DNA of 64,000 nt. It comes from Trichoplax adhaerens. Taxonomy: Eukaryota > Animalia > Placozoa. The notes below the pieces were generated by a model, which saw only the letters and a program-made list of their open reading frames with translations, was not told the origin of the DNA and searched no databases. Positions 8,907 to 60,300 of this stretch are shown here, one piece after another (the first letter of the stretch is position 1; the number at the start of each line of letters is the position of its first letter). The translations under genes were made by a program, and so were the position numbers. The stretch lies in contig NW_002060943.1 of NCBI RefSeq assembly GCF_000150275.1, positions 5,662,008 through 5,726,007 on the forward strand, given 5' to 3'.

Positions 8907-11900
8907 ATGATTAATCGAAATATCTGCTGGATTGGCTTTATGCTAACTTTTCTCTGGACAATAAACGCTATCGATATATCATCAGCTAAAAATTCATTTC
9001 AGCATGGTAAAATTCAAGTACTGTCTTGTCCTACTGGGTGCCAATGCCAATCTGGATTGCTACGGATAAAATGCTCATATTTATCACTACACCCAGGATT
9101 TCACCACCACATAGGAATATTTAAGAGCATGTAAGTTACGTTGATAATTTCTGGCAATGCTCATGAACCATTTACCGAATTAATGACAAGCAATAAATGT
9201 TTCAGTTAGCTTCTGTAGGTTTCATTCAAACCGGTTCTATAATAAACTGGAAAGTGAGCTTAGCTCCAATCCTCTCGCATTTGATAAAATATAGTGAAAT
9301 AATTAGCAATGAAGGAACTTCACATTAATTTTTTGAATAATGATGTGGAAATGGTGCATTTATGCTTTATTTATACTTTATTTTATATTTTATATTATTT
9401 ATGCTAAAATAAAGGTATTTGCTAGTGATCATTTTCAGATAACCGCCAGTAGATATCATAACGATTAAGTTATTCATAATGTAAATTTGTTACTGCAACA
9501 TGCAAGATTCAAGATTTATAGATTTGAAGAATATAGCAATTAAAGAAATTTGACATTACTTGATAAATAAATGGTTTTATGACAAGAAATTACTAATTTT
9601 GCAGCTTGGGCTTATTATCCTGGGATTTTAGTAGCCCATGATTTGGATTATATTGCTGGGGTACCTTACATGCAAGAAAATTACCATCATTAGACATTCA
9701 TGGAAAATAAAACATCTTATTAAAATACTAGCGGATTAAATATTAGATTGATTAATGTCGTTAAGTTCAATTCTAAAATATTTCTATCTATATTTTAATT
9801 TTACTTATAGAATAGTACCATAAATATAGCTTATCACGTACAGTTTCTATATCCGTAAAGATTTCTTAAATTCGGCAAGTATCTTGCCGAAAATTAGCGT
9901 TATTTAAAAACGAGGTAACTCAAATGAGTCTAACATACGAGGATAGTAACAATGTCTAGAGTATTGTAGGAAAGCTAGACTACGCTGAGGCCCGAGTTAA
10001 TAAGATATTAGATTAGCGGTGTTAGTGGCTGTCTATCAGGTGTAATAGGCCTAGCGGATTATTCGTGGATAATACTAAGGATGCTAGTCGTGCGGTTAAC
10101 GAATAAGTGGGACTGCATGGCGCCTTGATAGATGGTACCGGCACGTCTGAGTAGATGACGTATGATTGGCCCGAAATGAGGCATGACAATCATACGTAGC
10201 TTGGCGTCTTGTACTTGCAAGGCCCACATCATAGTATTAGTAGAGTGACTTCGTAATTGCGTTAGAAATTCTAAATAAGATTGTCGTTTAATCGGCATTA
10301 CTATAACTACAATGTAACGCACTTTAGTTTTATTATGCTATATGATATTTTATTCACATTTCGTAGCCAAATTAATGTTAGATAATATAGAAATCGATGC
10401 TCAAAACTATTTCTGGACGATATTCAATCTTGATTAAGGATAAAAGTATACGTATTTTTAATGTTTGTAGAGATAGCATATCAAATCGATTATATTATTG
10501 AGTAATTAAAATTGAAATTAAAGTAGAAACATTTTTATCAAATTTGATAACAAATTGTGACTGAAATGTAAAATATACTTTTTACCGCCATATAGGCTAT
10601 TATGAGACATAATATGATATAAAAATACTAATATAACTATCTCTTACTGAATAGACATATTCCAGATGTAAGGGAGTGCAATTGTGAAGTCTATAGCAGA
10701 CTTGCAAAATTAAACTTCTATGGGATATCGCTGCAAGGTAGCTGCAGACTGATGTCAACATCAAAGGAACTGCATTTGCAGGAATTTTTAAATTCCCATC
10801 GTACAAAATGTTCAAAATTAAGTAAGATTATATTAAAATATGATCTAAGCAAATAAAGATGTTACATAATTAGATTACTTCTTCTATCGCATTTTGAGTT
10901 ACTTAGCGCTTGGAAAATAATTTTGCTTGATGATATTTGTTGCTTCGTTTTGTTAGGAAAACGAAATTCATATCGAATTCGGATAGCGAAAAGTGGGAGT
11001 AAGCATGAAATCAAAGTTATATTATTAATATTACATTTAATAGTAATGAGTCTATATTTATGCTTCTTGCGTTCATAACGGCAAACGATACTGAAGGCTT
11101 TATATTTGTATCTACAACTGAAGGAATACAAAAATAATGCTATTAGAGTTGAGCTACGTCAAAACTTAATGCGCTTTAGTTATTATATAAATTGCAAAAG
11201 CTCTAGAATTAACATGTAGTCGTTCTTGAGAATTCAGTTATACACTGTACATACAAGTATTTTACGCTGTAAAGGGTTTTCTATCTTGTACCTATAATTG
11301 TAATATAGCATTATTATGAATTATCAAGAATGCTGGGATTAGTATTCTATTTAATTTAAAAGTGCAACCGTTCGTTGTAGATACGAGTAAATTACGCCTT
11401 ATGAATGGTGGCATAAGCTGTGGAAGACTTGAAGTTATGTATAATAACAAGTGGGCGACCGTTTGCAATCCGGGTGAGGCAGCTAGTAAACGTTGGAGTA
11501 TTCGAAATGCTGATGTTGCTTGTCGACAGCTAAATTTTCGAGGGAGGGCCTTTGTTTATGGTGCGCGTATTTCGATATTGCGTTTGAATCTCATCTACTT
11601 ACATTATTAAAGCTAAATTGATAACTTCCCGTTTAATATCAAATAATTACAATTGGAGCCATTTAATTAAATTGCTGTGACTTTTTAATTCTTTTCAAGA
11701 TGGATCGGCATTTGGACAGAGCAAAGAACCGATATGGCCTCGAGATCTACAATGTTCTGGTAATGAAACCGATTTATTGCAATGCCAGTATAGCAAGCTA
11801 CAATCGTCCTGTAGCCAGCAAAACAGTGTCGGCATTTGTTGTGGATATAACGAGAATCGAGGGTCACTAGCACCAGGTTCGATGACATCTAAAATTTTTA

Positions 11901-14318
11901 CTCTGTTTCATCAAAATATTATGAAATTTTCGTAGTTAGAAATTAATCTTTTATATTTAATAACTATCATTAGAATCATAGATAATCTTTATTATGACTG
12001 TAACAAATTGTGTGAGTTTGCAAGTCTGTAAATTACTCTTATGTTAATATAATACCAGATGTGAAATATTTAATTTTTAGATAATAGAAATTACTGTAAT
12101 TTTTAAATTAGTTTTTAGAATGACCATTGTGAGTATACAAAAATATATAGCTCACTGATAGAAGAGGAAATCTTCTCCATATTTTATATTAGTTCCAATG
12201 TACCAGAGCATCCGAATTACTGGTGGTAAGTCAGCCGTTAGTGGTCAGCCTCAGTTTTTATATCAAGGAAGATGGCATTCTGTTTGTCCGCTTGGTTGGA
12301 CAGAAAATGACGCCGATGTCTTTTGTAGGGAATTAGGTTTTGTCGGAGCTAAATCTATAGAAGGTCAGAAATTTACAAGTAATAATTTAATTTAAATTTC
12401 TTACTAATTCACTGGTGGATGAGAATACTCATTACACAACCTATAAAATTAAATGTTCAATTAGTCATCTTCAGTTTTAATAGCCATTAATTCCGTAACT
12501 AACCCTATAAGAAGCTTTATGTAGTTGAATTTATATAATTAAATTCATGTACCAGTATCTATTGAATTTGATTATAATAAAACCGATGAAAATTTATTTG
12601 CCAATGTATTGATAATAATAAGCTTTAAATTCTGCTTGCTATAATCTGTAGAATATATAGTGAAGATTGAAACTTGTTTCAGATTTCTTTCTTCGAATTT
12701 TAATTTTTCTAGCCAAAATTGATAAAGTAATTTCAAGGGCGATACTTTATTACAAGCTAAACTGTATCGGCAGTGAAGATTCCATTATGAATTGTCGATC
12801 CGATCTTGCTCAAAATCATAATCTTGCAAATAACTGCTATCATCCCAACAATCCCTCTGTAGCAATGGTTACGTGTCAAAAATCGGCAGGTATGGTTGTT
12901 ATCAAGGACATAAGAGTATATGTCCGTACCTAGTCTAAATTAAATATTAAGTAAAGCATGAAACTGATATTCTGGATTTCAATTATGAGTAGAGTTTAAA
13001 AAGGGCTGTGTTTTAGATAACTGTGCTTTATTCTAGTGAAGATAAACATATGTTTTTTAAATACCATGATATATTAGGAAATCCTTTATATTGTGATTTC
13101 TTAAATGGTTTATGCGACTGGAATCAAGTACAACAACACCATTCCATGAACTGGATTTGGAAAAATAAATGGAGAAAATTTCAAACCATGGATGATCTAA
13201 AATCGGGTATATATTTATATTTGGATATTTATTAATAGTAAAAATTCATTCCTTTTATTTTATACGGTGGAATAAATGACCAGTGTACCTGTAAATATTG
13301 AAATTAAGTTTCGATTTACTTTCTCAAGAGCTAAAAAAGGGCAACTTTACTTGAATAGGTCCTTACGTATTTGTCCAATTAGATCATGGTTATATAGGTG
13401 ATAAGGCAGTTTTACAGAGCCCTCTCCTTGCAAAGTATCAATCGACTAAAGCAACGGTATGCAAAGAGGACTAAAATTATTGATCAAGGCTTATATAAAT
13501 TAGTAAAGCTACTTTCAAGGGCGCATTGTTATGCACTTAAATATGTCTTGTACTATAACCTTTTATCTTTCATCTAGATATTAATATCGTATTATATGGA
13601 TGTCAGACCAGCTAAGCCTGCACTGACATTATTATCTACTAAAGTCTATTACCCAGTCGAAAATCAGCACGATACACTATGGTATTCTTATCCTAGGACT
13701 ACGAAGCGTTGGCTTTATAGCTCCATTATGTTTACGCCTCGATTCCAAAAATTTTATGTAAGTTTCTGTTTTACTAGATTACTATAACTTGTACAGCATA
13801 TCTATTTTTGGACTGAAGTTAGGCAATATAAATGACTTGAATTAATAAATTCGATCATGTAGGTATCAATACAAGTAGCCAAAGGTCCGGAATTATCTGG
13901 ATTCATAGGTTTAAGCAGAATTGAAATAGTTGGATGCGATATTTGTGAGTAACTTATACCTAAATGTGACCGATTATTTGCTGTACTGCTCATTCATAGC
14001 AGCATGTTAATCATATTTCTATCTTCTGACACTGCAACAGATCGTAATCGCACTCTTCTGAACCAAAATCGTAAGACTGTAAATTATGCTATACCAATTT
14101 TTTGCACCGCTGTTGTGATTATGGTATTACTTTTGGCAGCACTGACCCATGTGATAAAGAAAAAAAGCTATCAAAGACGATTAACATTAGATTTGCCTAG
14201 ACCTATTCGTAAAGGGAATGGAGGCGCATCTTGTAAACGAATTTCTGCAATAGCTTCACCAATTAAAAATCTGCATAATCGCAACTTCAATACTTCTGGC
14301 GAAACATCTAAAATATAA
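8907..14318 (+). CDS. Receptor paralogue 1: SP-LRRNT-LRRCT-SRCR-SRCR-MAM-TM-cytoplasmic tail (multi-exon)
   Basis: Phase-consistent GT-AG exons: 8907-9130 (signal peptide, CPTGCQC..IKC); 10655-10821 (ECNCEV..GSC..KC, LRRCT-like); 11363-11560 + 11700-11876 (SRCR1: LRLMNGG..GRLEV..WATVC..ADVACRQL / IW..DLQCSGNETDLLQC); 12193-12363 + 12713-12889 (SRCR2); 13078-13206, 13359-13456, 13578-13757, 13863-13944 (MAM: CDF..GLCDW..AVLQSP); 14041-14318 (TM AIPIFCTAVVIMVLLLAAL, ends ETSKI*). Confidence 0.85.
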
Positions 14319-17759: not shown

Positions 17760-20700
17760 TCAAACTTCCGCGGTCAAACTTTCCCTAGATCTTACAGTAT
17801 TAGGAGATATTATAGACCTATCTGCTGTTCCATTTCTGGGACATGAACGAACTTGTTCTCGTTCCATATTATCATTGATTCTATTTGTAGTCAATTCGTC
17901 GGGAATGATATCATGTTCAGTGGGACTTTCGTCTTCAGGTGGTACAATCTGATCGTAGGTAGGCGGGTTCTCGTCTGTAATTATCATAGAAATAGTGCCA
18001 ACTTAGAAATGGTGGCATAACTCACAAAGAAGATTCTATTTGATTCAGCCGTTACCTGCTATTGTTCGTAACGGTTTCTTCTTACAAATTTGACAGATCA
18101 TCAACAGGATGCAACCTAGTATCAAAGCAGTTGCAACAGTTGCACGTATACACTTACGTACAAAGGGCTCTTTTCAAAAGACGAATATATGATTACATCA
18201 CAGTTTTAAATTTGATCATTTTTTCTGTACTAAGACCTACACTGTGTCTAAATGAATTTTACTTTTCCTCACCTGGTGTAATACCAACAATAGAAATGTC
18301 ATCTAATCCTACGATCACACTTTCAGAAGACGTTTTCATAACAACGAAGCTAATCTAAATTGTGAATATTGTTGCATTATGCATAGAAAATTAGCCAAAA
18401 TTACTAAAGTAATTAATTTTGTATGAATACTTCGCTTTAAAATTTAAGATAAATTAAACATTTTGTGATTTATCATACCGTAAATGTTTTTACTGAGGGC
18501 AGTACTTCCGTATATACGGAAATCCATGCACCGTTGGTATCATGACTCATTTTCTTAATTATTTTGTTGTTTTCATCAACCTTGAGGGTAAGAACACTTC
18601 CGCTACTTGATAGGTAATATTTAAATCTTATCTACGAAATCATGGGAGAAACTAAATTACTTACTCAAATATATATTCAACAGTTATACATAAGCTACTT
18701 ATAATTCTTGAAGGACTCTAATTACTTCCAAATATCATAGTTCTTTAACCACGTTACTACAGTTTTCATTATTGCACGTATTTCCGTAATAATATTTATG
18801 CTGCTAATAGTACTACCCAATAGTCAATATTAGTTACCGTAACGATCGAACTTTGGAAACTTTGTTGAGGGCTACGAAGGATAGCTTTGTCAAGGTAAAA
18901 GCCATTCCTTGTCGATACAACTATACTTGGGTCTATAAATCAAACGCAATGACTTTTAATGTAATTTGTAGGATAAAAATTGCAGGTAAATTTCAAAGAG
19001 AATTAACACACCAAAATCGATGAAAGAAATCTTAACATACCACTTTTTTTAAAGTTTGTACCAGGAAAAATATAGTTGCTTTGCCAAGTCCAATCCATCC
19101 TCAGATTTCTTTGCGGCTGAGACCAGCCGCAAAAGCCCTTATCAAATTTGCAAGAAGTGGTATTCCCACTTGATTGTTCACATGCAACAACAGCCACAGA
19201 TTGCGGGTTATTACAAATGTAGCTACCATTAGTATTACGCAAGCTTGGGCAATGTTCTATTGATGATTCTAAACCAGTGCAGTTGTATGACGCTACTTGA
19301 TAGCTACTTTGAGGATTGAGTGGAGAACCTAGATTATTTATAAAGTAATAATCTCAATTGAGATAAAAAATAAAAAAAATTAGAAAGCCTATGCTCTATA
19401 CGCTTTACCAGGATAGTGACGAGATGATACATAATATCCCATTTGGCGACAAAGAACGTTTGCTGTATTATTACTAAGATTTTCCGCACACATATAACCC
19501 CAAACTCCATGTGCTTTAATTTCTACGACACCGGACAAGTAATTGGATAACTGAACCGACTCTGTTATTTGCATTTGAGTTCCTAGAGATTTCGTAGTAG
19601 TACGTAAAGGATAGGAAGCTAAAGGAAAACATAATTAAAACGATTAAAATGCATTTAAAGAAATAAAACTTTAAACGATAACATTATTTAGCAAACATTT
19701 ATTTTAAGATAAACATAAGACTTTCTATTTAATTGGGGCCAAATATTTAAAATAAGTGTGCTTTAGCTCTAGTAGATGATGTAGGATTGTTTGTTTTTTA
19801 GTTCTTTCATTTAAATAATCCAGGAACTTAGGAATACCTAACTAGAACAGCTTCAAAAATTCTACAGTAAAGAATGTAGATACTACCGATCATTCTAAAG
19901 GATGTGCAGTACATAAAATCCTAGCACATTAACCAATAATTAATTGTAGTGGCCAATATATAGGAAGGCTTACAAATTAAAATAATGACTACATTGCCCT
20001 ATTTATATTAGTAGACCCAGCCGATTATACCAATTTCATGGCACAGCATTTTTACAAATTCAATATAATTTTATAATAATTAAGAACTTCATTCCTAAGA
20101 AAACGTTATAAATTGCTGGCAATCAGCAGCATTTGTATGTGTACATACTCGTTGTAGATCCTCCATAGCAAGAAGGAATATTGCAATACTCCGATACTTT
20201 CTGTGAATTAGTTGTATAACACCACGGCCTAGAGCTTTTTCCACCAGGATTTCGACAGTAATTATACGATAAGTCATCATCTGGATATTTTGAAGGTGAA
20301 TAGCTATGATTATGTGGGGAATTCGACTTCCATTGCTGACAATTGTAGCCGCTAATCGTTTTCGTAATGCTACCTCTATAGTAAACTCCATTACCAGTAT
20401 AACAATTTACTTCTATTATGATAATAAAAAATTTTCGTTAAAGGAATTTGAGGTTTCAAAATTCGATAAATTTCCGAACTTACCGTACGGCGCAATTAAG
20501 ATATAGTCAACTTCAATTTGCCCACCATGTCCTCTTCCCAAAACACCATCAAGAATAATCTATTGACCAAAACAATTATCACTAGTGAGCATGAGAGTTT
20601 CTACATTTATTGACTAATGCATAAGTTAGCTTAACTTGCTTTAAGTATTTATGCTTAATACACTTAGGGCTCCTACAAAATTTAGTAATAAAAATCATAC

Positions 20701-23700
20701 TCGAGTTCTGCGTTGTCGCGGCGTAAAATGGAAATCAGCTTTACGCCAACTACTTGCACTTGATTTCGTAGTTGTTAACCAAACATCTTTATATTGATTA
20801 GTGTACAGGCCTGAGAATATAGCTAATTCATCAACGCCACTTCCGTAAAGCTTAAAATACATTAAAACCTGAATAAATTCCATAAAAAAGATGACACGAA
20901 TCATGTTAGAGGTTCCAAATAATCTACTCTACAAAGAAATCGATAATGAACTGACACATACGTATACGCGTACGTTTATCATGTGATCATTAAAATATAT
21001 GATGGTGAAAACATAACAGTAGTGACTCTACCACATACGTGTATAGCGTAATACGTAAAGAAATTGCTTTTATAAGATTCGAAAGCCGTATAAATTTTAA
21101 GATTAGCATTATCGTATTTTAAAGATATAATGCTATCTAATGTAGTTGGATCGTTATACTTTCGACAAAGCCTCATAATTTATATAATAATAAATTAAAT
21201 CCATTTAAACGATTTCTAATATGTTACTGAAGCATCCAAAGCTGTATCACTAAATTCTTAGTTCAGCATGAGTGATAATTCTAAAATTTTAATATAAATT
21301 TTATTAAGCTAGCAATTCTACAGTTGAGAATTTGAGAAAGTGTGTAAAATATGAGAGATTAGCCTAAAAACTAACTCGAAATTCTTGGACATTATTCGGC
21401 AATTCTACGACAGGAGAAAGCAGTTGAGCGAAATGATTGCTAAGAGATTGAGAACTAGCAAGGTAAGCGTAATGGCCTAAATAGAAATTAGAATAAAAAT
21501 AAATACGATGCAAGATATTAAAAGATTACTACAGTATAAAATTATTTTTAAGTTGCGACATAGAATTATAATAAAATATAGGACCTGTAGTTCCATCGTG
21601 TTTTGTCCCAGATACCCTAGCCCAGTCAAGATCGTCGCTACTCTTTTCTTGACTGAATTTACAAAAATTTGAGCGGAAATCGCAAGCAGCAGCGATGGTA
21701 CCTAAATAGTAATAAATGATTAAGAATAACTTAATAGAGTTCATAGTTAAGAATACACTCGTATATCGAATGTGGCTATCACGCGGTTTCTATTTCCAGA
21801 AAAAGAAGATGTTTACTGTACGAAGAGTAATTAGGTTAGATGTTTAAATTTGAGTAGCTATCAATATAGCATTACATAGGCTATCAGAAATAGGCATAAC
21901 ACTTTATATCTACTGTCACTAAAACCGCATACCAGCTAATTATTTATGTGGAAGACAAGACAATTACTGCAGTTCAAGGTTTTCTTTCCATTGTGTCGCA
22001 AGCATGTGCGATCGTATCTTTTACTGGCACAATATATTAATCAATTTCAATTGTACATGATATGCATATTAAAGCCAAACCTGCTCTTTTGGATCGATGC
22101 AATCTCAGGTAATCTTCTATTAGTAGAACGAGACATTAGAATAAAATATTAATAATTTTTATAGGAAGGAAGCTGAAAGCTACAACGAAATGTTATAACC
22201 GAAATCTTCTTTCAAAGTAATTTATATTTGTACAAAATCATCAAAAGCTGAAAGAGCCAAACGATGCACTGTAAAATCTAATTTGTTTTACTATCCTAAT
22301 GCAATAAACAAGTAACGTCAATTTTACATGGGAGATATTGTGTGAAAGAAATTATTAATCATGTCATATTGCTTGCCAACCTGAATCAATCTTTCTACAA
22401 CGCAGATCAGACTTTCTCAATAACTGCAAGTTTAATAGTTGATTTTCCGATAATCTACATCTTCCAATTAATGAGTGAGACGGCTGATTTTTCCACTCGA
22501 CTATCCGTTGTAATTTGCAATCGTGGCAATCCAACGTGGTATCTTTTAATATTCTATGTCAGTTAGAAATGATTTATTCTTAGCCAAGAATATTTAAAAC
22601 ATTAAAAGATAAATATTACGATAACTATCAGCTTAGCAAATCACTGAATTTGAATCTCGGAGTTATCTGAATATAAATCCAAACTACTGATAGCATCATG
22701 TGATTTATGGTATACATTAATAGTAAATTGAAATATCTGTCTTGAAAATTTTGATGTGTTCGGTATGCATGACATGCATTAAGTAATGACTTTTTTTCAT
22801 TGCTCAGCGAAAGCTCGTCTTCAATTCAAGTTACCTTTATCATGGTATTACGTTAGGGATCAGACAAGTATGTTACTGTCAATAAGCAACCATAATAAAG
22901 AATTTGAATTTAAGATTTGTTTACGATGATGACAGCATTTACATAATGTGCTTATAATGCTAGTAATTATGAAAAGAAATGGGTATATCTAATAATCTTA
23001 TGTTATTGTTGTTTGAGTCTTTGTATAGTATTTTGTAAGTAATTTTACGTTGCTAACTTTTGATAACAAATAGTGTCACTGAGCCAACCTTTTCAAGTAT
23101 ACGGAAAAGGAAAATGAGACTAGAGCCAGTTTGTGAAATGCATTAATTTCTAGTTTCATTTCATCGGACTCTACTTTATTGTACATTTTATTTCACCAAG
23201 GACTATTCTAAAACCTGAGTATTTTAGACCATGCTCAATCATTCTAAACTAAGATTATTATTAACAAACAAACTAGCGACTACAAATGAGATAGAATGGC
23301 CTACTGGAAATTATAGAATAATCGGTAATAATGTTAAATTAGCACCATGAAAACCTTTTACTTTATCTGTAAGCTATAGATACTGAAGGCAATCATTTTT
23401 CTTAAAACATATCAAAACCGTTACTCATTGAGATTTTTGTTCACGCAGACATCGTTGTGAGGAAAATTGTACGCTAGTATATAGGATCATTAATAATAAT
23501 ATTGCATAAACAAACCGAGAACCTGATCAAAATAGTGGTAGCAACGTGTGATATAGAGATCTAAGAGTGCGAAAATCAAGTGGAAGGTTAAAAGAGGTTT
23601 TTCGTTTTTGTGTAGTCAGCAGTAAAACAAAAAGTAAATGAATGAAACGGAAGGCGATTTGAATACATCGAATTCGAGCAGTCTTTCATGTGATATTGGA

Positions 23701-24876
23701 GAACAATTTAAAACTCGACAATATTTCAATCAGGTATGTTTTACTGGCACTAATACCGGTATACTGTACCGAGTATAGTACTGCATGAAGAAGCGCAATT
23801 CTTCTTGATGGCTTTCGCAGTAACCGCGTTTGCAAAGAAATAAAATCATTCGAGTGCAGGATACACCAAAGCACGTTATATTCTGCAAAATTGCATTACA
23901 ATGCTTGCACTATGACAGGAGTTTCAGGATAGCCAGCTCATAACCAATTACTTCTATGTGGACTATACATTAATAAACTGCTACAGATAACTTAGCACCA
24001 AGTCGTAAGTGCCAACCGGCAGAAAGAATGGCAGATACATACTGTAATAACCTGTACAAGATCTAAGATCTAGTAGAGTAATACACCTGTGGAAATTGAA
24101 GGGTACTTATTTGACTATCTAGGATAAAAGCAGATTTGACATCATGAACGCATTTTACTAGATGTAAGATGCTGCCTTGATAAGATTTTGAAAGAATAAA
24201 TAACGCGTTACGCTTGTAAGAGCAAGACATTTTTACTCGATGACAATCTAATAACACAGTTCATGTCAACTATTCCGGTATACTGTACATAAAGTCGATG
24301 TTATTGTACTATCATTCATGATTTGTTGTCCATTTTCACATACTGTACACATTAACTGATTGGAATTAAATCAGAAAACAAGATTGATGATGCCAAAAAG
24401 TCATCAAATGATTGAATTAGCTGTAAAGTTGTAGCAGTCTTAGTTTCACTTGTTTAAAAACATGATTTGTTCATTGTTATGATGATATTACGTGTACAGT
24501 ATTAAGATATAGTACGGTTGAAGAAAGGAAATGTGCCGTTATCGCTGATAAGACAGTATAGCTAGCGCGTAAAAGTTATCAATAGACGAAATAGAACTAT
24601 ATAATGAAATTCAAACATAAGCAGGAAGACTACTGAAGAGAGAAGAGTGAACATCACTTACATTTGATTAAACCCAGTCCATTCATTCTTCTTCCGTAAT
24701 GCAGCATCCAAGGTATCACACAGTAAAACTTGATTACCATGATTTTGGCATCGTTGATGTTGTGAATTTCTATCCAATGCATCATTCGTAATACTAAACT
24801 TGTTACAATATTTGCCAGTTAGATTGGCAAGTAGAACTGCTAGAATAACAACAAAGTGGCGTATCATCTTTCTCAT
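17760..24876 (-). CDS. Receptor paralogue 2: SP-degenerate LRRNT-LRRCT-MAM-kringle-SRCR-MAM-TM-PPxY tail (multi-exon)
   Basis: Minus-strand exons: 24876-24662 (signal peptide, ends phase 2); 22553-22381 (ILKDTTLDCHDCKLQRIVEW..GRC..DLRC, LRRCT); 21701-21585, 21476-21376, 20868-20701, 20559-20484 (MAM1); 20412-20149 (kringle: CYTGNGVYYRG..CQQW..NYCRNPGG..PWCYT..EYCNIPSC, not in the ORF track); 19618-19409 and 19328-19041 (SRCR running into MAM2); 18932-18838, 18631-18479, 18354-18273 (MAM2); 18169-18056 (TM); 17974-17760 (DENPPTYDQIV..TAEV*). Confidence 0.85.
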
Positions 24877-25290
24877 TTTATGCAAATATGCAAATCATCG
24901 TTGACCAACGTAGTTTTAAAGTTTACACGAAGCAATAGTAATACTGTACACAATTGAAAAGGAGGGCGAAAGTCTTATCGAAAGTACTTGATAAATCAAC
25001 TATTACTGGATCATAAGTACTGTATATGTGGATCACTTATTACACAAGATAGCTATTTAACGCTAGGGATTAGTAATGACTATGATGCTTTCTATATTGC
25101 AAGATAATACAGCCAAGTGTTGCACAGATTTCCTTGAATTTGATAACCGGCCGAGCGGATTTGATGAGAAAGCTTGATTTGCAACGCAAGGTATGTTAAA
25201 GTCAATTTAGCTAACGCTGGGCTATCAGTTTGTACTCATTTGACCGGAAATTTGGACTTCACCAGCACCGACGGAAGTACAGTCTAGGTT

Positions 25291-37568: not shown

Positions 37569-40500
37569 ATGATGGTTCGACACCATTTATGGTTACTAAG
37601 CATCGTTTTCTTCACTTTCATTTATAGTGCATATTCCTCTCGTACTTTAAATAATTATTTAAATGATCCTAGTTCAAAATTAATAGACTATTTATCAATT
37701 CGATATGAAGATAAGCAGAATTTAAAGAATAGTCTAATATGGAAGAGAAAATATATCTTTTGCCCATCTCGATATCTGTCGTTACTTTTGTATAGCCTGC
37801 CTTCAGATTTTGACAAAAGGTAAGTTGAATACTTTTTAACTGGATGCCTTGCCGTATAACCTAGACGTTTTTAATGATGCTCATTTTATCAAATAAAATT
37901 CATATTTTATTCATAGCGTGTATTAATGACAGATTAAATGTTGTAATGTCTTCGTCTAGATGATTCATGAATAAATGTGCTTAAATCAGTAAAAAATCAT
38001 ACCATTGACCAACCGATCATGTAAAAGTTGTTAATTGAACTAAATAATCACGATTATCGACTTTCAGAAAGGATATTCTTCTAATTTAATTTGATTTGAC
38101 TTTAAGTCACTTGCAATCTAAATTAGATTTTTAAACTTGATAGTACAGTACATGACGATATTGCTATCACCACTCGCAAAGTAAAGATGCCGTTTCAACT
38201 ACTAAACAACAAAAAATTCTACTTGTACATTGTAAATAATGTAACTAAATGTAGCCAATATGTAGTTACCGCAACATTGTCAATACATTATTTAGCTTTT
38301 ATTTTTTAGTCAAATAGAATCCGGATACCCATGTTCAATATCGAATCATCGTTTCTGTATTTCTCTTTAGCTATTCACTTTTTCATAAGCATAGTTTCAA
38401 TCTAGTTTGTAAATCACACACTAGGTCTCTTTAGCCGTTTAGTGTGTTCCCGGTGAAATTTAGATAACTTAGCCTTATTTTTCTCTGTCGGTTTTCGCTA
38501 ATCAGTTTATTAAACATGATATGTTGTTCTATCTTAAATTGAAGTAGCTATCTTTCTTAAAATTTAGTATACTAAGTGAAGTTAGTGAATGTAATGGATC
38601 GGTGTGGAATCTATTCAAACTTGCTTATCAACGGGGACATAATTTATCAATTAAATGTCATGGGCCGCACTCACTAAATGGAATTAGTTTGAATAACAAT
38701 TTCATCAATAAAGATGTATATAGGAAAGCAGATGAAGGTAAAGGTAACAAAATATCTAGTTCTATTGACTCTCGACTATCTACTAGTAGTGGTAGATCGA
38801 TATCGTCAGAAAATTATTTTTACAGTAATTCTGTTCAAAGATCGTTTACCTACAGTGTACCCATATGGTGTATTCACAATCATTGCTCCATTTCACTAAA
38901 CTATTGTCTCTTGTATGAGACTCTATTACTTGATAGAACACATTATCGAACTTTACTATATAAACAGAAATTTTCAGAATTGTTCACATCACTGTTAACG
39001 ACTGATCATCAATTTCTATTCTATCATTGATCTGATATATGATGATTTTTACAGTAGACTATAGGGCTTCAAAACGTCATAGCAGATCAGCTAATACGAA
39101 GAGACCCGTTGGTAAGTGCATTTGTTACCTCTGATGAGAATATATTTTCGTCTTGCGAATTATAAGGATGTATATTTAGTATGGGTTCCATATCAATGGA
39201 ATGAATACTTGTTAGAGGAATAGTTCATTTTGAAGAAAAGAATTACGACTATACCAACCAATTTAAAGTATTATACGGTACATTAAGGAAAAAGTTAAAA
39301 CAGATTATGAGTTAACGACTATGATTTTACTTTTTTGGGGATAGATCCAACATGCTATTTTGGGAATGGCAGCCTTTATCAAGGCGTTATTAATGTTACT
39401 ATTGATGGAGAAAAATGTCTGCCTTGGCATATTGCTAATAGAACTAGCTATCGGCGAAGCAATAGTTTTTTCGGCCAAGATAATTTCTGCCGTAATCCGA
39501 ATGGTGAACGTACTTCACCTTGGTGTTATGTTAGAAATACTACAACAAGTGGAATTGGCTGGGCTTACTGTCCTATTCCAAAATGTTTACAGGGTCAACC
39601 TACTCTGTCGACTTTATTGCAGCCAGGTATAGATTTCTTAGAAGCTGTTCAAATACATAATTACAGATGTTATAGTTATTGTTATGCAACCACTGTAATA
39701 TTTAATTTAAGTAAACATGCAACTCGTATCTTATTATGTTGTGTTATGAATAAATTACATAGAAATTAAATCTCAGACGAGAGTTCGATTATCTGGGAAT
39801 AATTCTAATCGTGGAATCGGCCGTGTTGACATCCAGTTTAATAGCACTTGGGGCTCTATTTGTGCTCATGGCTGGACGTTTTCTGAATCATCGGTTGTTT
39901 GCCGTCAATTGGGATATATTGCAGCATTACCGGTTGAAGGTGATGATCATTTTTAATCTTAATGGTTGATTTAATTTGTGTAGAACATTTATTTATTTAA
40001 GCAAAGAACAATAGCTTTACTCTCGTATCATCGAATAAACTAAAGCTTCTATTTACTTGATACTTTAATAACAGTGAAAGTAGCACTACGGAATGATGTA
40101 ATACATTCTCAGTTAATTATATTCATATTAGTTAACCAAAAATAATTAGAAATTATGTACATGTTTTCATCCTATGCAATATCAGGGTCAACAAGTTTTT
40201 ATTTATTATAGAAACTGATGCCAGTATCAACTTGCAATACAGCAATATAACGTTTTGGTTATCCAAAATATCGTGTTCTGGATTTGAATCAGCGATAAAT
40301 GAGTGTAAAATATCATCTTTGAGATATCGAGGGATTTGCACCAGTAATAGAAAGATTGTTCACGTTAAATGTAGAACATGGCAAAGTCTAGGTAACCCGC
40401 ATTAATCTCATAATGTATTGATATTGCTTAAATTTGATGCCTACTTATCTTATGATGGTATAATTCGTTTTATTCGCTCTTATTTACTAGCCAAACAGTA

Positions 40501-42802
40501 TAACCTTACTACTAATAATAATGGAAAAGATCAAGTTAAACCAGACTGTGAAGGAAATAACAGAGATAACCATCAGACTGAAAATGCAGAGTCACTTACG
40601 AAATTCTACAGTGTCATTCTAATACCTTCAATTAGCGTGGCACTCATTTTCATAGCTTTCATTGTTATTATATGCATTCGGAGTCGGACTAGTAGGAGAA
40701 GACGAAGATATTTATGGTCATATTCGGACCCAGTCGAAGATTTTCAGTCACAAACTACGATAGAAGGCGGCACTTCAACAGGTTAAGATCATTTAATCCG
40801 CATAATAATGATTATACTATTTCTAATAGCGAAAGTCAAACGTTTATGGCACACCAGATTATTAGCACACTTGCAGTATCGAATACTGTAGGATGTTTGC
40901 TGATGTAATACTGGTTATTTTCGTGATTCAAATATTTAAATCTTTTACTAAGAATAATCAACCATTTTAAATGATGTAATGTTCAGAATATCAAGATAGC
41001 TAGTCGTTTGAAGTGATGATAAACTCATAAGCAAAAAGTAAACTACACTATTAAGACTCAAAAATTATTAGAAAAGTCTTTTAAATGTTGCAAGTTCATA
41101 ATCTATGATAGACGTATACATAGAAAGAATGGCTGCAAAAGTAATTATCTTAGTAACTGTGTATGTTTCGGACGATTTAGAGTTTGCAATATTCACAAGA
41201 AACTATAAGGAATAACTTAATGAAATAGTAGTCTTTATTGCAGCTAGTATTAGGAGAAAAACGGTGTTATTGTACGTATAATGATATGAACTTGTCGAAT
41301 AACTATAGCAAAGTAGAATAGGTAAAGCGGATAAGCTTACCCTGTAATTAGCATAACTAACAAAGTAAATCCATAAAGACGGCTTTTACAATGTAGGATG
41401 CTGTGATATATACCAATCACGAAATTCCAAATTTTAGAAAAATAAGGGCTTTATTGAATCTTATACAAAGATTAACTACACAGCTCTACTCTAGCCGAAT
41501 ACTACTTCTAAAGACTTCTACAACGAACTAACAGAATAATCTAAAGTTGCATGCTTTTATACTTTTCGTAGCATTCGCAGCTACAATCCGTATGGCAACC
41601 TTTTACCTTATTTTACACATAGTTAAATTATTCTTAGTAAGACTATTCTACTGCGGACCATCATTAATCCAATATGGATACGACTACAGTACTTACGTAG
41701 ACATTATTCACACCAGCCAAAGTACAATGAATTAACCATATCCTAATATATGATTTACAGTTCTATTTTTACCTATAGCCATATTAGTAACTCAACAGCT
41801 TACTGTATATAGTCATCTGTACTCTAGCATAGAGTCTCTACCACTACAGTCTATAGTTACAGCTACCAAATATCTCTTAGGATAAATATCTACCGTACAT
41901 TATACTACACATGGCTAACAGTCTACAATCACAATACTAAGTTACATTACAGATGCCTAGCGGGAAAGAATATTTATAATACAAATTAATAATGAGGATA
42001 TCTTATTTCTATGCTATGGTATTTCTATATGATAATGAGATTAGATATTTTACATATTAACCTAATCTGATTTCGTATCCGTATTTTCAAATAAGAATTT
42101 TACTTACTAATTTTATCAACAGAACAAAATAGCAACCTTAACTCTTAACCACATATCACAGACTTAATAGATAGAAGTATATTTCAAAAATATATGATAA
42201 GGCTATTCTGCTACGCTCCGTCCTCAAACTACAGTATTAAACTATAACTTACTCTATGTATTACGCTGTAGCAGACGAGGAATTCTAGAATAAAACATTA
42301 ATGTCTATCGTGTAAATTACCCATACCGTATTAACTAGATCAAATCGAAGTGTTTCTGTAAAATTTTTTGAAGACTGTATAATTATAATCATAGCAAACC
42401 ATTTCAATACTAGTAGTAAGCTAGTACTGTATTCGTGATAAAGTAATGTTTACTTATCGATTCTGTATTAGTGACACAAAACAAGCGGCCCAACCATAAA
42501 TTTATGGCATTAAATCTAGTGTATTTTTGAATAAGACATTGTTACTGTCGATGTCTAGATTCGGTAATATTCAAAATCGCAGTTATACGATGAAATATTA
42601 AGGGCTATAACAACAATAAAATTACTGTAACTGACAAAAATGAAAAATTTGATACTATTACTTAGATGCAACGTTGAGTAACGGAACTGTCACTTTTTAT
42701 TTTACTGTCTTAGGAATAAATATATTACAGGAAAACTTGCCGAGCTATGATGATGTTGTTAAGAACAGGAAATATATATCATGCTTGGAAACTATCGTAT
42801 AA
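37569..42802 (+). CDS. Receptor paralogue 3: SP-degenerate LRRNT-LRRCT-linker-kringle-SRCR-TM-LPxY/PDZ tail (multi-exon)
   Basis: Exons: 37569-37819 (signal peptide, ends phase 2); 38568-38737 (ECNGSVWNLF..IKCHGPHSLNGISL, LRRCT); 39055-39111 (KRHSRS linker); 39345-39626 (kringle CYFGNGSLYQG..CLPW..NFCRNPNG..PWCYV..WAYCPIPKC); 39763-39939 + 40212-40391 (SRCR); 40491-40781 (TM). The probable last exon is 42714-42802 (GINILQENLPSYDDVV..ETIV*); an alternative stop lies at 40786 if that intron is unspliced. Confidence 0.85.
41401..41950 (+). repeat. Dispersed repeat family, copy A (in the last intron of paralogue 3)
   Basis: Aligns by eye, nearly colinearly, with 58266-58978 (direct) and 56325-56640 (inverted). 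Shared words include ctactctagccgaatac, gcggaccatcattaatcc and gtctacaatcacaatactaagtt. Confidence 0.9.
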
Positions 42803-57370: not shown

Positions 57371-60300
57371 ATGAAAACTACTGCGCTCCAAGCCATTTCT
57401 TTTGGCTTCCTTCTTATCACTACTTTATGTGATGGCCTTCAAGATGATATAAAGGATTTAGGCTTGCGCTACATGTATCGATCGAATATCAAATCGACCA
57501 ATATCGTGTGTCCGCGATATTGCGAGTGCTATCCGAAACAGCTAAAAATTTCTTGTACAGCATGGATTGATGACATCAAGAATATACCACGATGGACAAA
57601 GCATATGTATGACAAATATTAACATTAAAACTTAGATACTTTTCTGAAAACTAGTAAAAGTTGCTGATTTTTGTGCAGTTTAATAGTATCTCTCTACCAA
57701 ACGCTATTAAATTTTTGTCCATGATAAAAATTAAAATTAAATTTTAAGCATTGAAGACGTCAGAAATAGTATACAGCACAATAGTAGCTTACAATCAATT
57801 AATAGTGCTTCAGGATATCTAATTTTATATAAATAAAAAATATGCTCTACCAAGTCTTCACCATATTGCAGCATTTTGCATAGGATCACGATAGACGAAT
57901 GCCATCTGCAAGATGTTGTATATTGTTTAATTATTTTTCCATCATCTGTTTAGTTTTAAATTTTGGTGTTGGGATGCTTAAGGAATGAGAAACTATTTAC
58001 AAAACTCTTAAAACTTTACGAAATTATGGATTTCAACTCGAAACCTTATCTTTATAATATTCAATCATTTTCTAAAATGCACTGATATCGTGGCTTATAC
58101 ACTACTGTAAATAAATTAGAATTGATACTTAAAGTAATATTTTGACGATAATTCTTTTGCAAAATATGTTGAAGGTACATAAATCTCGTGAATTGTATTG
58201 GAGATATAGCCTATACATAAATTCAGCAAGAGTGCTGGAATTTTTTAGATTACTAATTTTTATATCTGCGATAAAATCCGATCACGAATATTCCAAGTTG
58301 TAGAAAGTTAGAACTTTATTATATCTAATGCAAAGACTAGCTACACACAGCCCTACTCTAGCCGAATACAACTACTGAAAGACTTCCAGAAAGAACTAGC
58401 TGATTAATCTAAAGTTGCTAGCTTATATACAGTGTGTATCAAAGTATTTTGTCACTTTGAAAAGCATCAACCAGTGATCTTAATAATCAAATACTGATTA
58501 AATCATTCTATTATAGCTTTACTGTATTTTTAAAGAAAAACATTGCCCGAAAGTGACAAAATGTTATGATATACACCGTACATTTCGTAGCAGTCATAGC
58601 CACAATCGGCTTAGCAAGATTCTACTATAATTTACACATAGTCAAATTATTATTAGTAATAACATTTTATAGCGGACCATCATTAATCCGAAATGGAAAC
58701 AACTGCAGTATTTCCGTAGATATTATTCTTAGCAGTCAAAGTACGGTAAACTAACCTATCCTAATATATGAATTACAGTTCGATTTATATCTCTAGCCTT
58801 AATAGTAACTCAACACCTTCCTATATATAGTCATGTACTGTAGCATAGAATCTACTATTACAGCTTATGGAGCGAACTACCAAATACGTCTTAAGACAAA
58901 TATAGGAAGTTGCGCTTCCGTGCATCTTACTAAACTTAGCTAAAAAAAGTCTACAATCACAATACTAAGTTTCGTTACAACATCATAGGAGTAAAAAAAC
59001 CGTACGATAATTTGAAACTGTTTACGATATTTTACTTCCTTTAATAAATTTTATAATAAGCAGTAGTCGGCTGATATACAATTATAAATTAAGAAATGCT
59101 ACTATATAATAATATTCTTAGAGAGAGTATGTATGCATTAGCTGGCAGAATCGATAGTTCCTTTGGAATTTATCGAGTTCTGCCGTAGTTACAGAATTGT
59201 GTGATGTTATATTAGCGCAAATTTATTTTACAATTGTTTGCATGTCTTTTTTATAATGCTGCCTAAAAATTATGAGTATTATTTATAGCTACGTCAGTTG
59301 TGATAATATTGGTTACATATAGTTTATTCTAAATTATCCGAGCAATTACGTAAATAAAAAAATGGATATTATGGATATTGGTATAGTGCATAGTTAGTGA
59401 GCATATTTTACATTACTGAGACTTTTATTTCAATGCTTCTTTTTCAAGTGCATAAAATTCGCTTGCAATACTGTGTACTGTCTACCTTTTACTATTAGAC
59501 TGGCTTCATATGCCAATACTATTATCTAATCTAAGTAAGATAGATAGACCTTAAAGGTTTAAAGGTCAACACGACTATATTAATCGGATTGAGGAGATTC
59601 AGGGAAGATCTTCTTACTTAGATTATTTGTATCCCTGAAAGCGAAGCTCCAGTTCTATTCATTCGTATATTTAAAAACTTTATAGCTATTTAACATTTGT
59701 AACACTTTCATTGTACTAAATTTAGACTACTAGAGATGTTATTCACCAATATTTTCTGAATTTATACATAAACTGTTTACAGAGCTGAGTTTTGCTCACA
59801 ATAAGTTTTTGATTTTTTTATTGTCTTAAATATGCTAGAGTTTATCCTATGAAAAATTAATGTAATACTTAGTATAATATGAAGACGTATTGCTTATAGC
59901 TTCATTCATTTTCTATATTGTCTACTTGTATCCTAAATTGTTCTATCGTTCATATTTCATCAGCCAATTTGAATCCCAGCAGTTGACTTTCGACTATCAA
60001 TTTTTTATGAAACTGCATCAGCTCTTCCAGAGATCTAGTCCAGATGATAAATTGACTGGTATTTTAATGAAAATTCAAGATATGACAGCTCACAAGAAAA
60101 ACAAGCAATCTAGAGCTATGCCAAGTCTTTACAAAGATACAACCTCATTGAAAGATATCATTAAAAGTAAGAATGACTCCTATATATATTCTACAACAGT
60201 ACTAAACTGGTAATATAAGATCAGAAAGATACCTTTTTTGGTTATAAGAATTTAAGATATTGTTTAGAATCTCTTATTTAAACTGGAAAGCTCCTTCCAT

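What the first reader, a model, noticed from the sequence alone, without database searches (positions are those of the whole stretch)
8907..60166. Receptor family with LRR caps but apparently no LRR repeats: LRRNT exon spliced straight to LRRCT exon in four paralogues
Seen: all four genes begin with a signal peptide + LRRNT(-like) exon ending in phase 2 (9130, 24662, 37819, 57606). A long first intron follows (0.75-2.4 kb), then a phase-2-to-1 LRRCT(-like) exon (10655, 22553, 38568, 59964). I found no open 72-nt phase-2 LRR exon in these introns by eye. The joins rebuild one LxLxxNxxxCxC-type strand: KSI-HIPDVRECNC, NQI-ILKDTTLDCHDC, DKS-ILSEVSECNG, KHI-QFESQQLTFDY. Established: the smallest well-known capped LRR ectodomains (GPIb-beta, GPIX) keep one full repeat between the caps, and germline lamprey VLR genes carry the caps with LRR cassettes added somatically. 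Inference: most likely a minimal, fast-diverging cap-only domain defining an undescribed receptor family. Much less likely, LRR modules are supplied by micro-exons, trans-splicing or somatic insertion.
Basis: partly seen in the sequence, partly recalled or inferred. Interest (0 to 1): 0.85.

Follow-up and report, generated by a model that had tools for sequence, protein, structure and literature searches.

The report
LRR-cap domain with no repeats
In the placozoan Trichoplax, at least 13 membrane-receptor genes start with a miniature leucine-rich-repeat domain that keeps only the two end caps and has lost every repeat. RNA shows the two cap exons spliced directly together in the one gene that could be tested, which makes this the smallest LRR-type domain I could find described.

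Summary
All four genes have a signal-peptide + LRRNT-like exon ending in phase 2 and a phase 2-to-1 LRRCT-like exon at the stated coordinates.

- **Splicing.** For gene 1, RNA contigs from three studies join 9130 directly to 10655 with no letters between. The Trichoplax sp. H2 protein RDD44960.1 has the same join.
- **Family size.** I found 13 members with the same two-exon design: eight in this tandem cluster and five on two other scaffolds.
- **Origin.** A canonical Trichoplax LRR gene has the same intron positions and phases, plus ten or eleven 72-81-nt phase-2 LRR exons in between. A scan that recovers ten of those exons finds none in the 13 first introns.
- **Homology.** Profile-profile comparison links exon 1 to LRRNT (94.8%) and exon 2 to LRRCT (85.6%), with clean controls. 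Pfam stays below its cut-offs. LRRCT cysteines 2 and 4 are lost together in nine members.
- **Not shown.** The fold of the joined domain could not be tested. Splicing is RNA-proven only for gene 1.

The receptors (SRCR/MAM/kringle, one membrane span) belong to the known placozoan scavenger-receptor expansion. The cap-only head appears undescribed. There are no signs of VLR-like assembly. An earlier unchecked note of this scan (s1-759544, other DNA of this genome) describes what looks like another member.

The parts
8907..9130 (+). Gene 1 exon 1: signal peptide + LRRNT (CPxxCxCx8C), ends in phase 2
   Evidence: Translation. Pfam LRRNT 13.8 bits, below cut-off. RNA joint 9130->10655 in 3 runs. 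Identical in RDD44960.1.
10655..10821 (+). Gene 1 exon 2: LRRCT-like, 4 Cys, phase 2 to 1
   Evidence: RNA joints 9130->10655 and 10821->10957. AF2 with the E2 family alignment gives pLDDT 83-95 over residues 71-130.
10957..10998 (+). Gene 1 exon 3: 42-nt basic linker exon (R-K-R across the E2/E3 boundary)
Evidence: RNA joints 10821->10957 and 10998->11381.
11381..12887 (+). Gene 1 exons 4-7 (11381-11559, 11699-11874, 12191-12361, 12711-12887): two SRCR domains
   Evidence: RNA joints. Pfam SRCR 122 bits on P0027.
13076..13944 (+). Gene 1 exons 8-11 (13076-13205, 13358-13455, 13577-13757, 13863-13944): MAM domain
   Evidence: RNA joints. Pfam MAM 40.3 bits.
14041..14318 (+). Gene 1 last exon: transmembrane helix and cytoplasmic tail, stop at 14316-14318
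   Evidence: RNA joint 13944->14041. The open frame of 634 codons is kept through all joints.
24662..24876 (-). Gene 2 exon 1: signal peptide + degenerate N-cap (no CPxxCxC), phase 2
   Evidence: Sequence. The 3' part and the E1-E2 join are present in TRIADDRAFT_51899. That model's own first exon at 25289-25378 has no signal peptide.
22381..22553 (-). Gene 2 exon 2: LRRCT-like, 4 Cys, phase 2 to 1
   Evidence: Sequence. Join as in P0001. Aligns with gene 1 E2 with all four Cys in register.
17763..21789 (-). Gene 2 downstream exons: MAM, kringle (20126-20437), SRCR (19392-19634, 19006-19353), MAM, TM (18048-18173), tail
   Evidence: Open segments. Pfam Kringle 91 bits, SRCR 38.6 bits. The H2 orthologue is 765 aa with MAM, Kringle, SRCR, MAM.
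37569..37819 (+). Gene 3 exon 1: signal peptide + strongly degenerate N-cap (one Cys), phase 2
   Evidence: Sequence. No transcript evidence.
38568..38737 (+). Gene 3 exon 2: LRRCT-like with Cys 1 and Cys 3 only, keeps C-x-x-P-x-x-L-x-G-x-x-L
   Evidence: Sequence. Alignments.
39311..40783 (+). Gene 3 downstream: kringle, SRCR (two exons), TM + tail
   Evidence: Pfam Kringle 62.7 bits, SRCR 44.4 and 23.3 bits. Open segments.
57371..57606 (+). Gene 4 exon 1: signal peptide + canonical LRRNT (CPxxCxCx8C), phase 2
   Evidence: Sequence. Alignment.
59964..60166 (+). Gene 4 exon 2: Cys-less derivative of the LRRCT exon, phase 2 to 1
   Evidence: Sequence. Alignment. No transcript evidence.
61722..64000 (+). 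Gene 4 downstream: SRCR (61722-61892, 61921-62298), MAM-like start (62718-62942); the gene runs off the window
   Evidence: Pfam SRCR 32.6 bits. Open segments.

Best explanation
These genes encode type-I transmembrane receptors of the placozoan SRCR/MAM/kringle scavenger-receptor type. Their membrane-distal tip is a module of about 90 residues made only of an LRR N-terminal cap (LRRNT, exon 1) and an LRR C-terminal cap (LRRCT, exon 2).

The two exons are spliced directly together. The junction recreates a single LxLxxN-type beta-strand shared by both caps. No complete 24-residue repeat lies between them: the last LRRNT Cys and the first LRRCT Cys are 24-27 residues apart.

The module most likely arose from an ordinary Trichoplax extracellular LRR gene. 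In such genes each repeat is its own symmetric 72-nt phase-2 exon. Deleting all repeat exons leaves the reading frame and the cap-to-cap strand intact. The resulting gene then expanded by tandem duplication to at least 13 copies and diverged quickly.

Shown here: gene structure, direct splicing in gene 1, homology of both exons to LRR caps, absence of LRR exons, and family size.

Inferred: that the module folds as a closed two-cap unit, and that it serves as a variable recognition or interaction head.
For: - **Splicing.** RNA joint 9130->10655 in three runs from three studies, with contig-length arithmetic excluding extra letters. The same join is in H2 protein RDD44960.1, and for gene 2 in TRIADDRAFT_51899.
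- **Family.** 13 genes have E1 ending in phase 2 and E2 in phase 2 to 1, each with a unique acceptor 7-8 residues before the first Cys. C4(NT)-to-C1(CT) spacing is 24-27 in all 12 members that have both Cys.
- **Canonical comparison.** In gene L005, E1 ends in phase 2 at the same point. Ten or eleven LRR exons of 72-81 nt follow. The LRRCT exon is phase 2 to 1, with 8 residues before CxC.
- **No LRR exons.** 0 in 13 first introns (about 17 kb) against 10 in the control.
- **hhalign.** Family E1 vs 16 canonical Trichoplax LRRNT exons: probability 94.8%, E 5.6e-8. Family E2 vs 7 canonical LRRCT exons: 85.6%, E 5.6e-6 over 43 columns. Cross, reversed and 40 column-shuffled controls gave probability <=33%, median <0.5%.
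- **PDB profile searches.** All hits are non-significant (E 0.36-8). Of the 9 hits for E1, 7 are LRRNT caps at chain positions 2-37. The top hits for E2 include the LRRCT of Nogo receptor, TLR5 and SLITRK1. AMIGO-1 and LGI1 LRRCT also appear.
- **Cysteines.** Cys 2 and Cys 4 of the LRRCT are lost together in 9 members. This fits the C1-C3/C2-C4 pairing of LRRCT, which I state from my own knowledge of GPIb-alpha.
- **Structure leads.** AF2 with the E2 alignment gives pLDDT 83-95 for residues 71-130, in the order strand-helix-strand-strand-helix. In the ESM Atlas, all ten best named clusters are extracellular LRR proteins at 0.81-0.84, and its own model aligns to LRRC38/TLR4 at TM 0.55 over 38-131. 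These are leads only.
Against: - Pfam does not call either cap at its curated cut-off. The best LRRNT score is 19.2 bits against 25.8, and there is no LRRCT hit.
- A profile of four E2 exons found only two proteins among 1.84 billion, both from this locus.
- The fold of the joined module was never tested against solved structures. AF2 of the full protein left residues 20-68 (LRRNT) below pLDDT 50, and fold searches were filled by the SRCR, MAM and TM parts.
- ESM structural neighbours also included unrelated folds at similar TM.
- Direct splicing is RNA-proven only in gene 1.
- Genes 3 and 4 have lost most or all cap cysteines and may be decaying.
Confidence: 0.8

Rival explanations
1. The two exons are an evolutionary relic. 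After the LRR exons were lost, the cap remnants stayed as a poorly structured, drifting N-terminal leader or linker with no binding role of its own. The working parts of the receptors are SRCR, MAM and kringle.
For: Cap exons are only 19-33% identical between paralogues whose kringles are 44-56% identical. Gene 3 has lost the LRRNT cysteines and gene 4 all LRRCT cysteines. Pfam fails to call the caps. AF2 is unconfident for the LRRNT part.
Against: Thirteen copies on three scaffolds keep the exon pair, the phases, the 24-27-residue Cys spacing, the CPxxCxC motif (11 of 13) and the hydrophobic and G-x-C core of exon 2. Cysteines are lost in structurally matched pairs rather than at random. AF2 is very confident for the exon 2 part once the family alignment is given.
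Confidence: 0.13
2. Real LRRs are inserted between the caps in some cells or transcripts. The routes would be micro-exons, alternative or trans-splicing, or VLR-like somatic gene assembly. The cap-only form would then be just the germline or default state.
For: This genome does use 3-nt micro-exons elsewhere (earlier notes). First introns are long (0.6-2.4 kb). The layout of germline lamprey VLR genes looks similar on the surface (own knowledge). RNA was examined for one gene only, and from contigs, which drop rare variants.
Against: Contig arithmetic in two runs leaves no room for extra letters at the gene 1 junction, and table 5c lists none. No LRR-like exon lies in any of 13 first introns, with a positive control. 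The LRR-unit motif occurs at background level (0-4 hydrophobic chance hits per 10 kb, none LRR-like) across about 134 kb of the cluster, against 7 true repeats in 5 kb of the control. The only alternative joint seen (9130->9206, one run) gives an immediate stop, not an LRR.
Confidence: 0.03
3. Gene-model artefact: exon 1 and exon 2 belong to different transcripts, or are chance open frames in some of the four genes (especially genes 3 and 4).
For: No transcript evidence for genes 3 and 4. The public H1 models of genes 1 and 2 are wrong at their 5' ends. The profile search found no annotated protein containing the E2 of gene 3 or gene 4.
Against: Refuted for gene 1. All 13 genes show the same exon order, spacing, phases and strong splice signals, followed by in-phase SRCR, MAM or kringle exons on the same strand.
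Confidence: 0.04

Closest known systems
Platelet glycoproteins GPIb-beta and GPIX (smallest capped LRR ectodomains)
   Same: Signal peptide, 4-Cys LRRNT, 4-Cys LRRCT, single membrane span. The whole LRR domain is little more than its caps. A survey of worm, fly, mouse and human extracellular LRR proteins lists them as 'SS, LRRNT, 2LRR, LRRCT1, TM' (PMC2235866).
   Different: They keep one full 24-residue repeat, giving about 50 residues between the last LRRNT Cys and the first LRRCT Cys (my own recollection of the sequences). The Trichoplax module has 24-27 residues and only one shared strand. The Trichoplax proteins carry SRCR/MAM/kringle domains after the caps. No orthology is implied.
Canonical Trichoplax extracellular LRR genes (e.g. 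the LRR-Ig gene at G000:C1414:9729000-9734000, L005)
   Same: Same exon 1 content (signal peptide + LRRNT), ending in phase 2 inside the first LxL strand. Same LRRCT exon, phase 2 to 1, starting 7-8 residues before CxC. Profile-profile matches of 94.8% and 85.6%.
   Different: Ten or eleven LRR exons of 72-81 nt lie between the caps there and none here. Downstream domains are Ig there, and SRCR/MAM/kringle here.
Germline (unassembled) lamprey/hagfish VLR genes
   Same: The germline gene carries LRRNT and LRRCT coding parts separated by non-coding DNA without repeats (own knowledge; VLR background in PMC3900441).
   Different: VLR germline genes are incomplete and are completed by copying flanking LRR cassettes. 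Here the intervening DNA is an ordinary GT..AG intron that is spliced out. No cassettes lie nearby. The cap-only product is an in-frame 634-aa receptor.
Placozoan SRCR scavenger-receptor repertoire (Kamm et al. 2019, PMC6321704)
   Same: Gene 1's H2 orthologue is annotated as an SRCR protein. That paper counts 45 SRCR transmembrane proteins with more than 20 partner domains, most combinations restricted to the phylum.
   Different: The paper's text as searched does not mention an LRR-cap module on SRCR receptors. It treats LRR proteins separately. Its figure and supplement were not inspected.

Membership tests
LRRNT (Pfam PF01462 / cysteine-rich N-terminal LRR flank) | Four-Cys motif C-x(2-4)-C-x-C-x(5-9)-C directly after the signal peptide | tested here: met
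   Present in 11 of 13 members, including genes 1 and 4 of the window. Absent in genes 2 and 3.
LRRNT (Pfam PF01462 / cysteine-rich N-terminal LRR flank) | Score above Pfam's curated cut-off (25.8 bits) | tested here: not met
   Best scores are 19.2 bits (gene 5, E 9.5e-4) and 13.8 bits (gene 1).
LRRNT (Pfam PF01462 / cysteine-rich N-terminal LRR flank) | Profile-level homology to bona fide LRRNT modules | tested here: met
   hhalign vs 16 canonical Trichoplax LRRNT exons: 94.8%, E 5.6e-8. Controls <=33%. 7 of 9 PDB hits are LRRNT caps.
LRRCT (Pfam PF01463 / SMART LRRCT) | C-x-C ... C ... C pattern with a C-x-x-P-x-x-L-x-G-x-x-L core | tested here: met
   Four Cys in genes 1, 2 and 5. Cys 1 + Cys 3 only in nine members. 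None in gene 4. The C-x-x-P-x-x-L-x-G-x-x-L motif is exact in genes 3, 7, 8 and 9.
LRRCT (Pfam PF01463 / SMART LRRCT) | Score above Pfam's curated cut-off (20 bits) | tested here: not met
   No hit for any E2. The model is weak in this genome: no canonical LRRCT exon reaches the cut-off either, the best being 17.3 bits.
LRRCT (Pfam PF01463 / SMART LRRCT) | Profile-level homology to bona fide LRRCT modules | tested here: met
   hhalign vs 7 canonical Trichoplax LRRCT exons: 85.6%, E 5.6e-6, 43 columns. Controls <=5.7%.
LRRCT (Pfam PF01463 / SMART LRRCT) | Three-dimensional cap fold with C1-C3 and C2-C4 disulfides | tested here: inconclusive
   AF2 gives pLDDT 83-95 and a strand-helix-strand order for exon 2. 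Co-loss of Cys 2 and Cys 4 is indirect support.
Extracellular LRR repeat proteins | At least one complete 20-29-residue LRR between the caps | tested here: not met
   24-27 residues between caps, holding one LxLxxN strand only. No LRR exon in the first introns. Direct RNA join in gene 1.
VLR-type somatically assembled receptors | Incomplete germline gene plus flanking LRR donor cassettes | tested here: not met
   The germline gene gives a complete in-frame mRNA. No LRR cassettes in about 134 kb.
SRCR-superfamily membrane receptors | SRCR domain(s) in the ectodomain of a single-pass membrane protein | tested here: met
   Pfam SRCR 122 bits in P0027. SRCR exons in genes 2, 3 and 4. A TM helix is predicted in the last exon.

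The most novel reading that the evidence does not exclude
The caps-only unit is an autonomous, stably folded domain class of its own: an LRR-derived module without repeats. It would serve as a rapidly diversifying recognition head. In the members with an RxxR/RxKR site right after it (genes 7, 8, 9 and the C1397 member m13), it could be released by furin-type cleavage as a soluble fragment.
Probability: 0.3. Interest if true: 0.7.

Novelty: new variant of a known kind. Interest (0 to 1): 0.55.

Why it matters
LRR domains are usually described as repeats protected by caps. Here nature has kept the caps and removed every repeat in an expanded, expressed gene family. Three things follow.

- **Structure.** It sets a lower size limit for the fold and gives protein engineers and structural biologists a natural two-cap mini-domain to test.
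- **Gene evolution.** It is a clean example of how one-repeat-per-exon gene structure, with symmetric phase-2 exons, lets a domain be shortened to zero repeats without breaking the frame.
- **Placozoan biology.** It adds an unrecognised, fast-evolving N-terminal module to at least 13 of the scavenger-type receptors thought to mediate microbe or self/non-self recognition. It also shows that standard domain annotation and the 2008 gene models miss it.

Tried and rejected
- Single-sequence searches of the genome with E2 of genes 1, 2 and 5 found almost only themselves.
- The Pfam LRRCT model is nearly blind in this genome.
- A four-sequence E2 profile against 1.84 billion proteins returned only the two local models.
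- Attempts to fetch the H2 orthologues of the other paralogues failed.
- AF2 of RDD44960.1 without an alignment was useless (pLDDT 32).
- MAFFT stacked E1 and E2 fragments on each other whenever both were given. Only E2 rows could therefore be used for the second AF2 job.
- Foldseek and VIA searches of that 632-residue model reported only SRCR, MAM-like sandwiches and the TM helix.
- The ESM Atlas gave nothing for the gene 2 fragment.
It was redone from coordinates.
- Joined E1+E2 peptides of genes 2-5 and the other members were not sent to any search or folding tool, because no reference exists for them. That step is left out. For gene 1 the joined protein was available as database protein P0027.
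- A first six-frame LRR motif was discarded because it spans exon boundaries and missed the control gene. It was replaced by an exon-unit motif.
- Polymorphism density was 1 synonymous site in 391 nt of E1+E2, against 17 in 1524 nt of intron 1. This is too weak to argue for constraint (binomial P about 0.09, my own arithmetic).

Full report
**What the window is.** The window is 30% GC and is G000:C1414:5662008-5726007 of a 105.6-Mb assembly in 1414 contigs. Proteins encoded here are catalogued as Trichoplax adhaerens TRIADDRAFT_51897 and TRIADDRAFT_51899. A near-identical orthologue is RDD44960.1 of Trichoplax sp. H2. Earlier notes of this scan also named the genome as Trichoplax.

**Observation.** I read all four loci.
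- Each gene starts with an ATG, a hydrophobic signal sequence and a Cys-containing stretch.
- This first exon ends at a GT donor with two bases of a codon left over: 9130, 24662 (minus strand), 37819 and 57606.
- After an intron of 0.75-2.4 kb, an AG acceptor opens an exon whose first base completes that codon: 10655, 22553, 38568 and 59964.
- That second exon ends one base into a codon: 10821, 22381, 38737 and 60166.

**RNA evidence (gene 1).** I laid contigs of four runs from four studies on 8800-14400.
- The joint 9130->10655 (GT..AG) is present in X9 (declared RNA-Seq), X5 and X8.
- In X5 a 60-nt contig consists of exactly 30 nt ending at 9130 and 30 nt starting at 10655.
- In X8 a 2228-nt contig carries exon 4 at its positions 1811-1989. 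The remaining 239 nt equal 42 (exon 3) + 167 (exon 2) + 30 (end of exon 1). Nothing, not even a 3-nt micro-exon, lies between exons 1 and 2.
- The same contigs define all twelve exons. Joined in a script, they give an open frame of 634 codons: signal peptide, cap module, two SRCR domains, a MAM domain, a membrane helix and a short tail (Pfam).
- The H2 protein RDD44960.1 (P0027) is identical over the first 131 residues, including the join.
- The 2008 H1 model of this gene (P0002) lacks exon 1 and half of exon 2, so it is wrong at its 5' end.
- One run also shows a joint 9130->9206 that runs straight into a stop codon.

**Other genes of the window.**
- Gene 2's public fragment model P0001 carries the same E1-E2 join. 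It starts from an upstream exon (25289-25378) without a signal peptide. The in-frame ATG at 24876 gives one.
- The H2 orthologue of gene 2 is a 765-aa protein with MAM, kringle, SRCR and MAM. This matches the exons I see downstream.
- Gene 3 continues with kringle, SRCR and a membrane helix. Gene 4 continues with SRCR and MAM and leaves the window.
- I have no transcript evidence for genes 3 and 4.

**The family is larger.**
- A Pfam LRRNT hit just past the window's end led to a fifth gene (L001). It has a textbook CPxxCxCx6C exon and a CDC...W...C-x-x-P...C exon, again phase 2 and phase 2 to 1, 727 nt apart.
- Scanning 60 kb further downstream found three more members (L009, L010, L011).
- It also found a MAM-kringle-SRCR gene whose cap exons I could not find (L008).
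- Profiles of eight E1 and eight E2 exons then found further pairs on scaffolds C1397 and C1399, with E from 1.9e-5 to 4e-2 per exon.
- Five of these, when read, have the same design, with a unique acceptor 7 residues before the first Cys.

That makes 13 members. An earlier unchecked note of this scan (s1-759544) describes an 'LRR/LRRCT-furin-MAM-kringle-SRCR-SRCR-MAM-TM' receptor elsewhere in this genome. It is probably another one.

**Are the exons really LRR caps?**
- Pfam alone says no. The best LRRNT score is 19.2 bits (cut-off 25.8), and there is no LRRCT hit. However, the Pfam LRRCT model does not reach its cut-off on any exon in this genome, canonical ones included. Canonical LRRCT exons find each other only at E 0.01-0.2.
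- I therefore built alignments, from coordinates only, of 11 family LRRNT parts, 12 family E2 exons, 16 canonical Trichoplax LRRNT exons and 7 canonical LRRCT exons. I compared them with hhalign. E1 vs LRRNT gave 94.8%, E 5.6e-8. E2 vs LRRCT gave 85.6%, E 5.6e-6 over 43 columns.
- Controls were clean. Cross-comparisons gave <1%. Reversed alignments gave 2.1% and 0.2%. Forty column shuffles each gave at most 33% and 5.7%, with medians <0.5%.
- PDB profile searches are individually non-significant but on target. Seven of nine E1 hits are LRRNT caps of chondroadherin, VLRs, Slit2 and AMIGO-1 at chain positions 2-37. The E2 hits include the LRRCT of Nogo receptor, TLR5 and SLITRK1.
- The cysteine pattern adds an internal test. 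Three members have all four LRRCT cysteines. Nine have lost exactly Cys 2 and Cys 4 together, and one has lost all. This is what the C1-C3/C2-C4 pairing of LRRCT, which I know from GPIb-alpha, predicts.

**Gene-structure argument.** In a canonical Trichoplax LRR-Ig gene (L005):
- Exon 1 (signal peptide + LRRNT) ends in phase 2 inside the first LxL strand.
- Each of ten or eleven repeats is its own 72-81-nt phase 2-2 exon.
- The LRRCT exon is phase 2 to 1 and starts 8 residues before CxC.

The cap-only genes have exactly these two outer exons and nothing between. Deleting the symmetric repeat exons keeps the frame and fuses the half-strands. In genes 8 and 9 the junction reads L-L-I-x-x-N, a perfect LxLxxN.

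A scan for open AG..GT phase 2-2 exons with an LRR core recovers 10 repeats in the control. It finds none in the 13 first introns, about 17 kb in all.

**Is the module really repeat-free?** The distance from the last LRRNT Cys to the first LRRCT Cys is 24-27 residues in all 12 members with both. That is enough for the LRRNT tail and one strand, one repeat less than I recall for GPIb-beta and GPIX (about 50). A four-species survey lists those two as 'LRRNT, 2LRR, LRRCT1' (PMC2235866). On that counting the Trichoplax module has one.

**Structure.**
- AF2 on RDD44960.1 alone failed (pLDDT 32).
- With twelve E2 rows aligned, residues 71-130 reach pLDDT 83-95. Strand 74-83, helix 85-96, strand 100-107, strand 113-115 and helices 116-133 follow in that order. 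This fits an LRRCT as I know it.
- The LRRNT part stays below pLDDT 50, and the packing of the two caps is untested.
- Fold searches of the 632-residue model were filled by SRCR, MAM-like sandwiches and the TM helix.
- The ESM Atlas gives only leads. All ten best named clusters are extracellular LRR proteins (0.81-0.84). Its own model aligns to LRRC38/TLR4 at TM 0.55 over residues 38-131, but unrelated folds score similarly.
- The joined peptides of the other members have no reference, so that search and folding step was left out.

**Rivals.**
- Micro-exons are excluded for gene 1 by the contig arithmetic.
- Somatic VLR-like assembly is unsupported. The intron is an ordinary spliced intron, the cap-only mRNA is complete, and an LRR-unit motif that finds 7 repeats in 5 kb of the control finds only scattered hydrophobic chance hits in about 134 kb around the cluster.
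- A 'decaying relic' reading cannot be dismissed for genes 3 and 4. It fits poorly with 13 copies that keep spacing, motifs and paired cysteines.

**Function (inference).** The downstream domains place these proteins in the placozoan scavenger-receptor expansion (PMC6321704). The cap module sits at the membrane-distal tip. It evolves faster than the kringles of the same genes: 19-33% against 44-56% identity for the pairs among genes 2, 5 and 8. This suggests a variable recognition or interaction head. Four members have an RxxR/RxKR site at the end of exon 2, so the head might be shed. This is speculation.

**Novelty.** No paper in the library holds LRRNT, LRRCT and Trichoplax together. The placozoan immunity paper treats LRR and SRCR proteins separately. 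I rate this a new variant of a known kind: known caps and a known receptor class, in a repeat-free arrangement that I could not find described.

Noticed in passing
L001 3845-4047 and 4775-4947 (= G000:C1414:5729852-5730954, 3.8-5 kb past the window's end): A fifth paralogue with the most canonical caps of the cluster (CPxxCxCx6C, then CDC...W...C-x-x-P...C). It is followed by MAM, kringle, two SRCR and MAM exons.
   Followed up: yes
L009, L010, L011 (C1414:5756008-5786007); L013, L014, L016 (C1397:0.97-1.02 Mb); L015, L017 (C1399:0.70 and 1.44 Mb): Eight more members with the same exon 1 / exon 2 design. Most have only Cys 1 and Cys 3 in the LRRCT exon. Further weak profile hits (C1404:821800, C1397:1127588, C1397:1221680, C1405:2357019, C707:827) were fetched in part but not read.
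   Followed up: partly
L008 2192-5239 (C1414:5748199-5751246): A MAM-kringle-SRCR gene lies inside the tandem cluster. I could not find its cap exons. It may be a member with a lost or unrecognisable head.
   Followed up: no
window 9130->9206: An alternative splice joint was seen in one run (X5, depth 17.5 against 23.5 for the main joint). It removes a 75-nt mini-intron and meets a stop codon at once. The product would be a 75-residue LRRNT-only peptide or a decay target.
   Followed up: partly
window 8907-14318 and 22381-25378: The 2008 gene models are wrong at their 5' ends. TRIADDRAFT_51897 lacks exon 1 and splices out half of exon 2. TRIADDRAFT_51899 is a 194-aa fragment that starts from an upstream exon without a signal peptide.
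   Followed up: yes
end of exon 2 in L009 (about 1632-1643), L010 (about 4204-4215), L011, L016; window 10815-10965: Furin-type RxxR / RxKR motifs sit directly after the LRRCT-like exon in four members. An R-K-R spans the exon 2/3 boundary of gene 1. This is a possible cleavage site between the cap head and the rest of the receptor.
   Followed up: no
window 28369-30726 (-): An intronless 786-aa ADAM10/17-type metalloprotease gene lies between genes 2 and 3. Pfam finds Reprolysin_5 at 112.6 bits, Disintegrin, and the ADAM10 Cys-rich domain. It is a candidate sheddase that happens to sit inside a receptor cluster.
   Followed up: partly
window 359-4678 (-): An intronless 1439-aa ORF. Its H2 counterpart carries NOV_C and a faint SACS hit.
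   Followed up: no
window 14231: A 6-nt deletion polymorphism lies in the cytoplasmic tail exon of gene 1 in two runs. It matches the two-residue difference between the H1 and H2 proteins.
   Followed up: no
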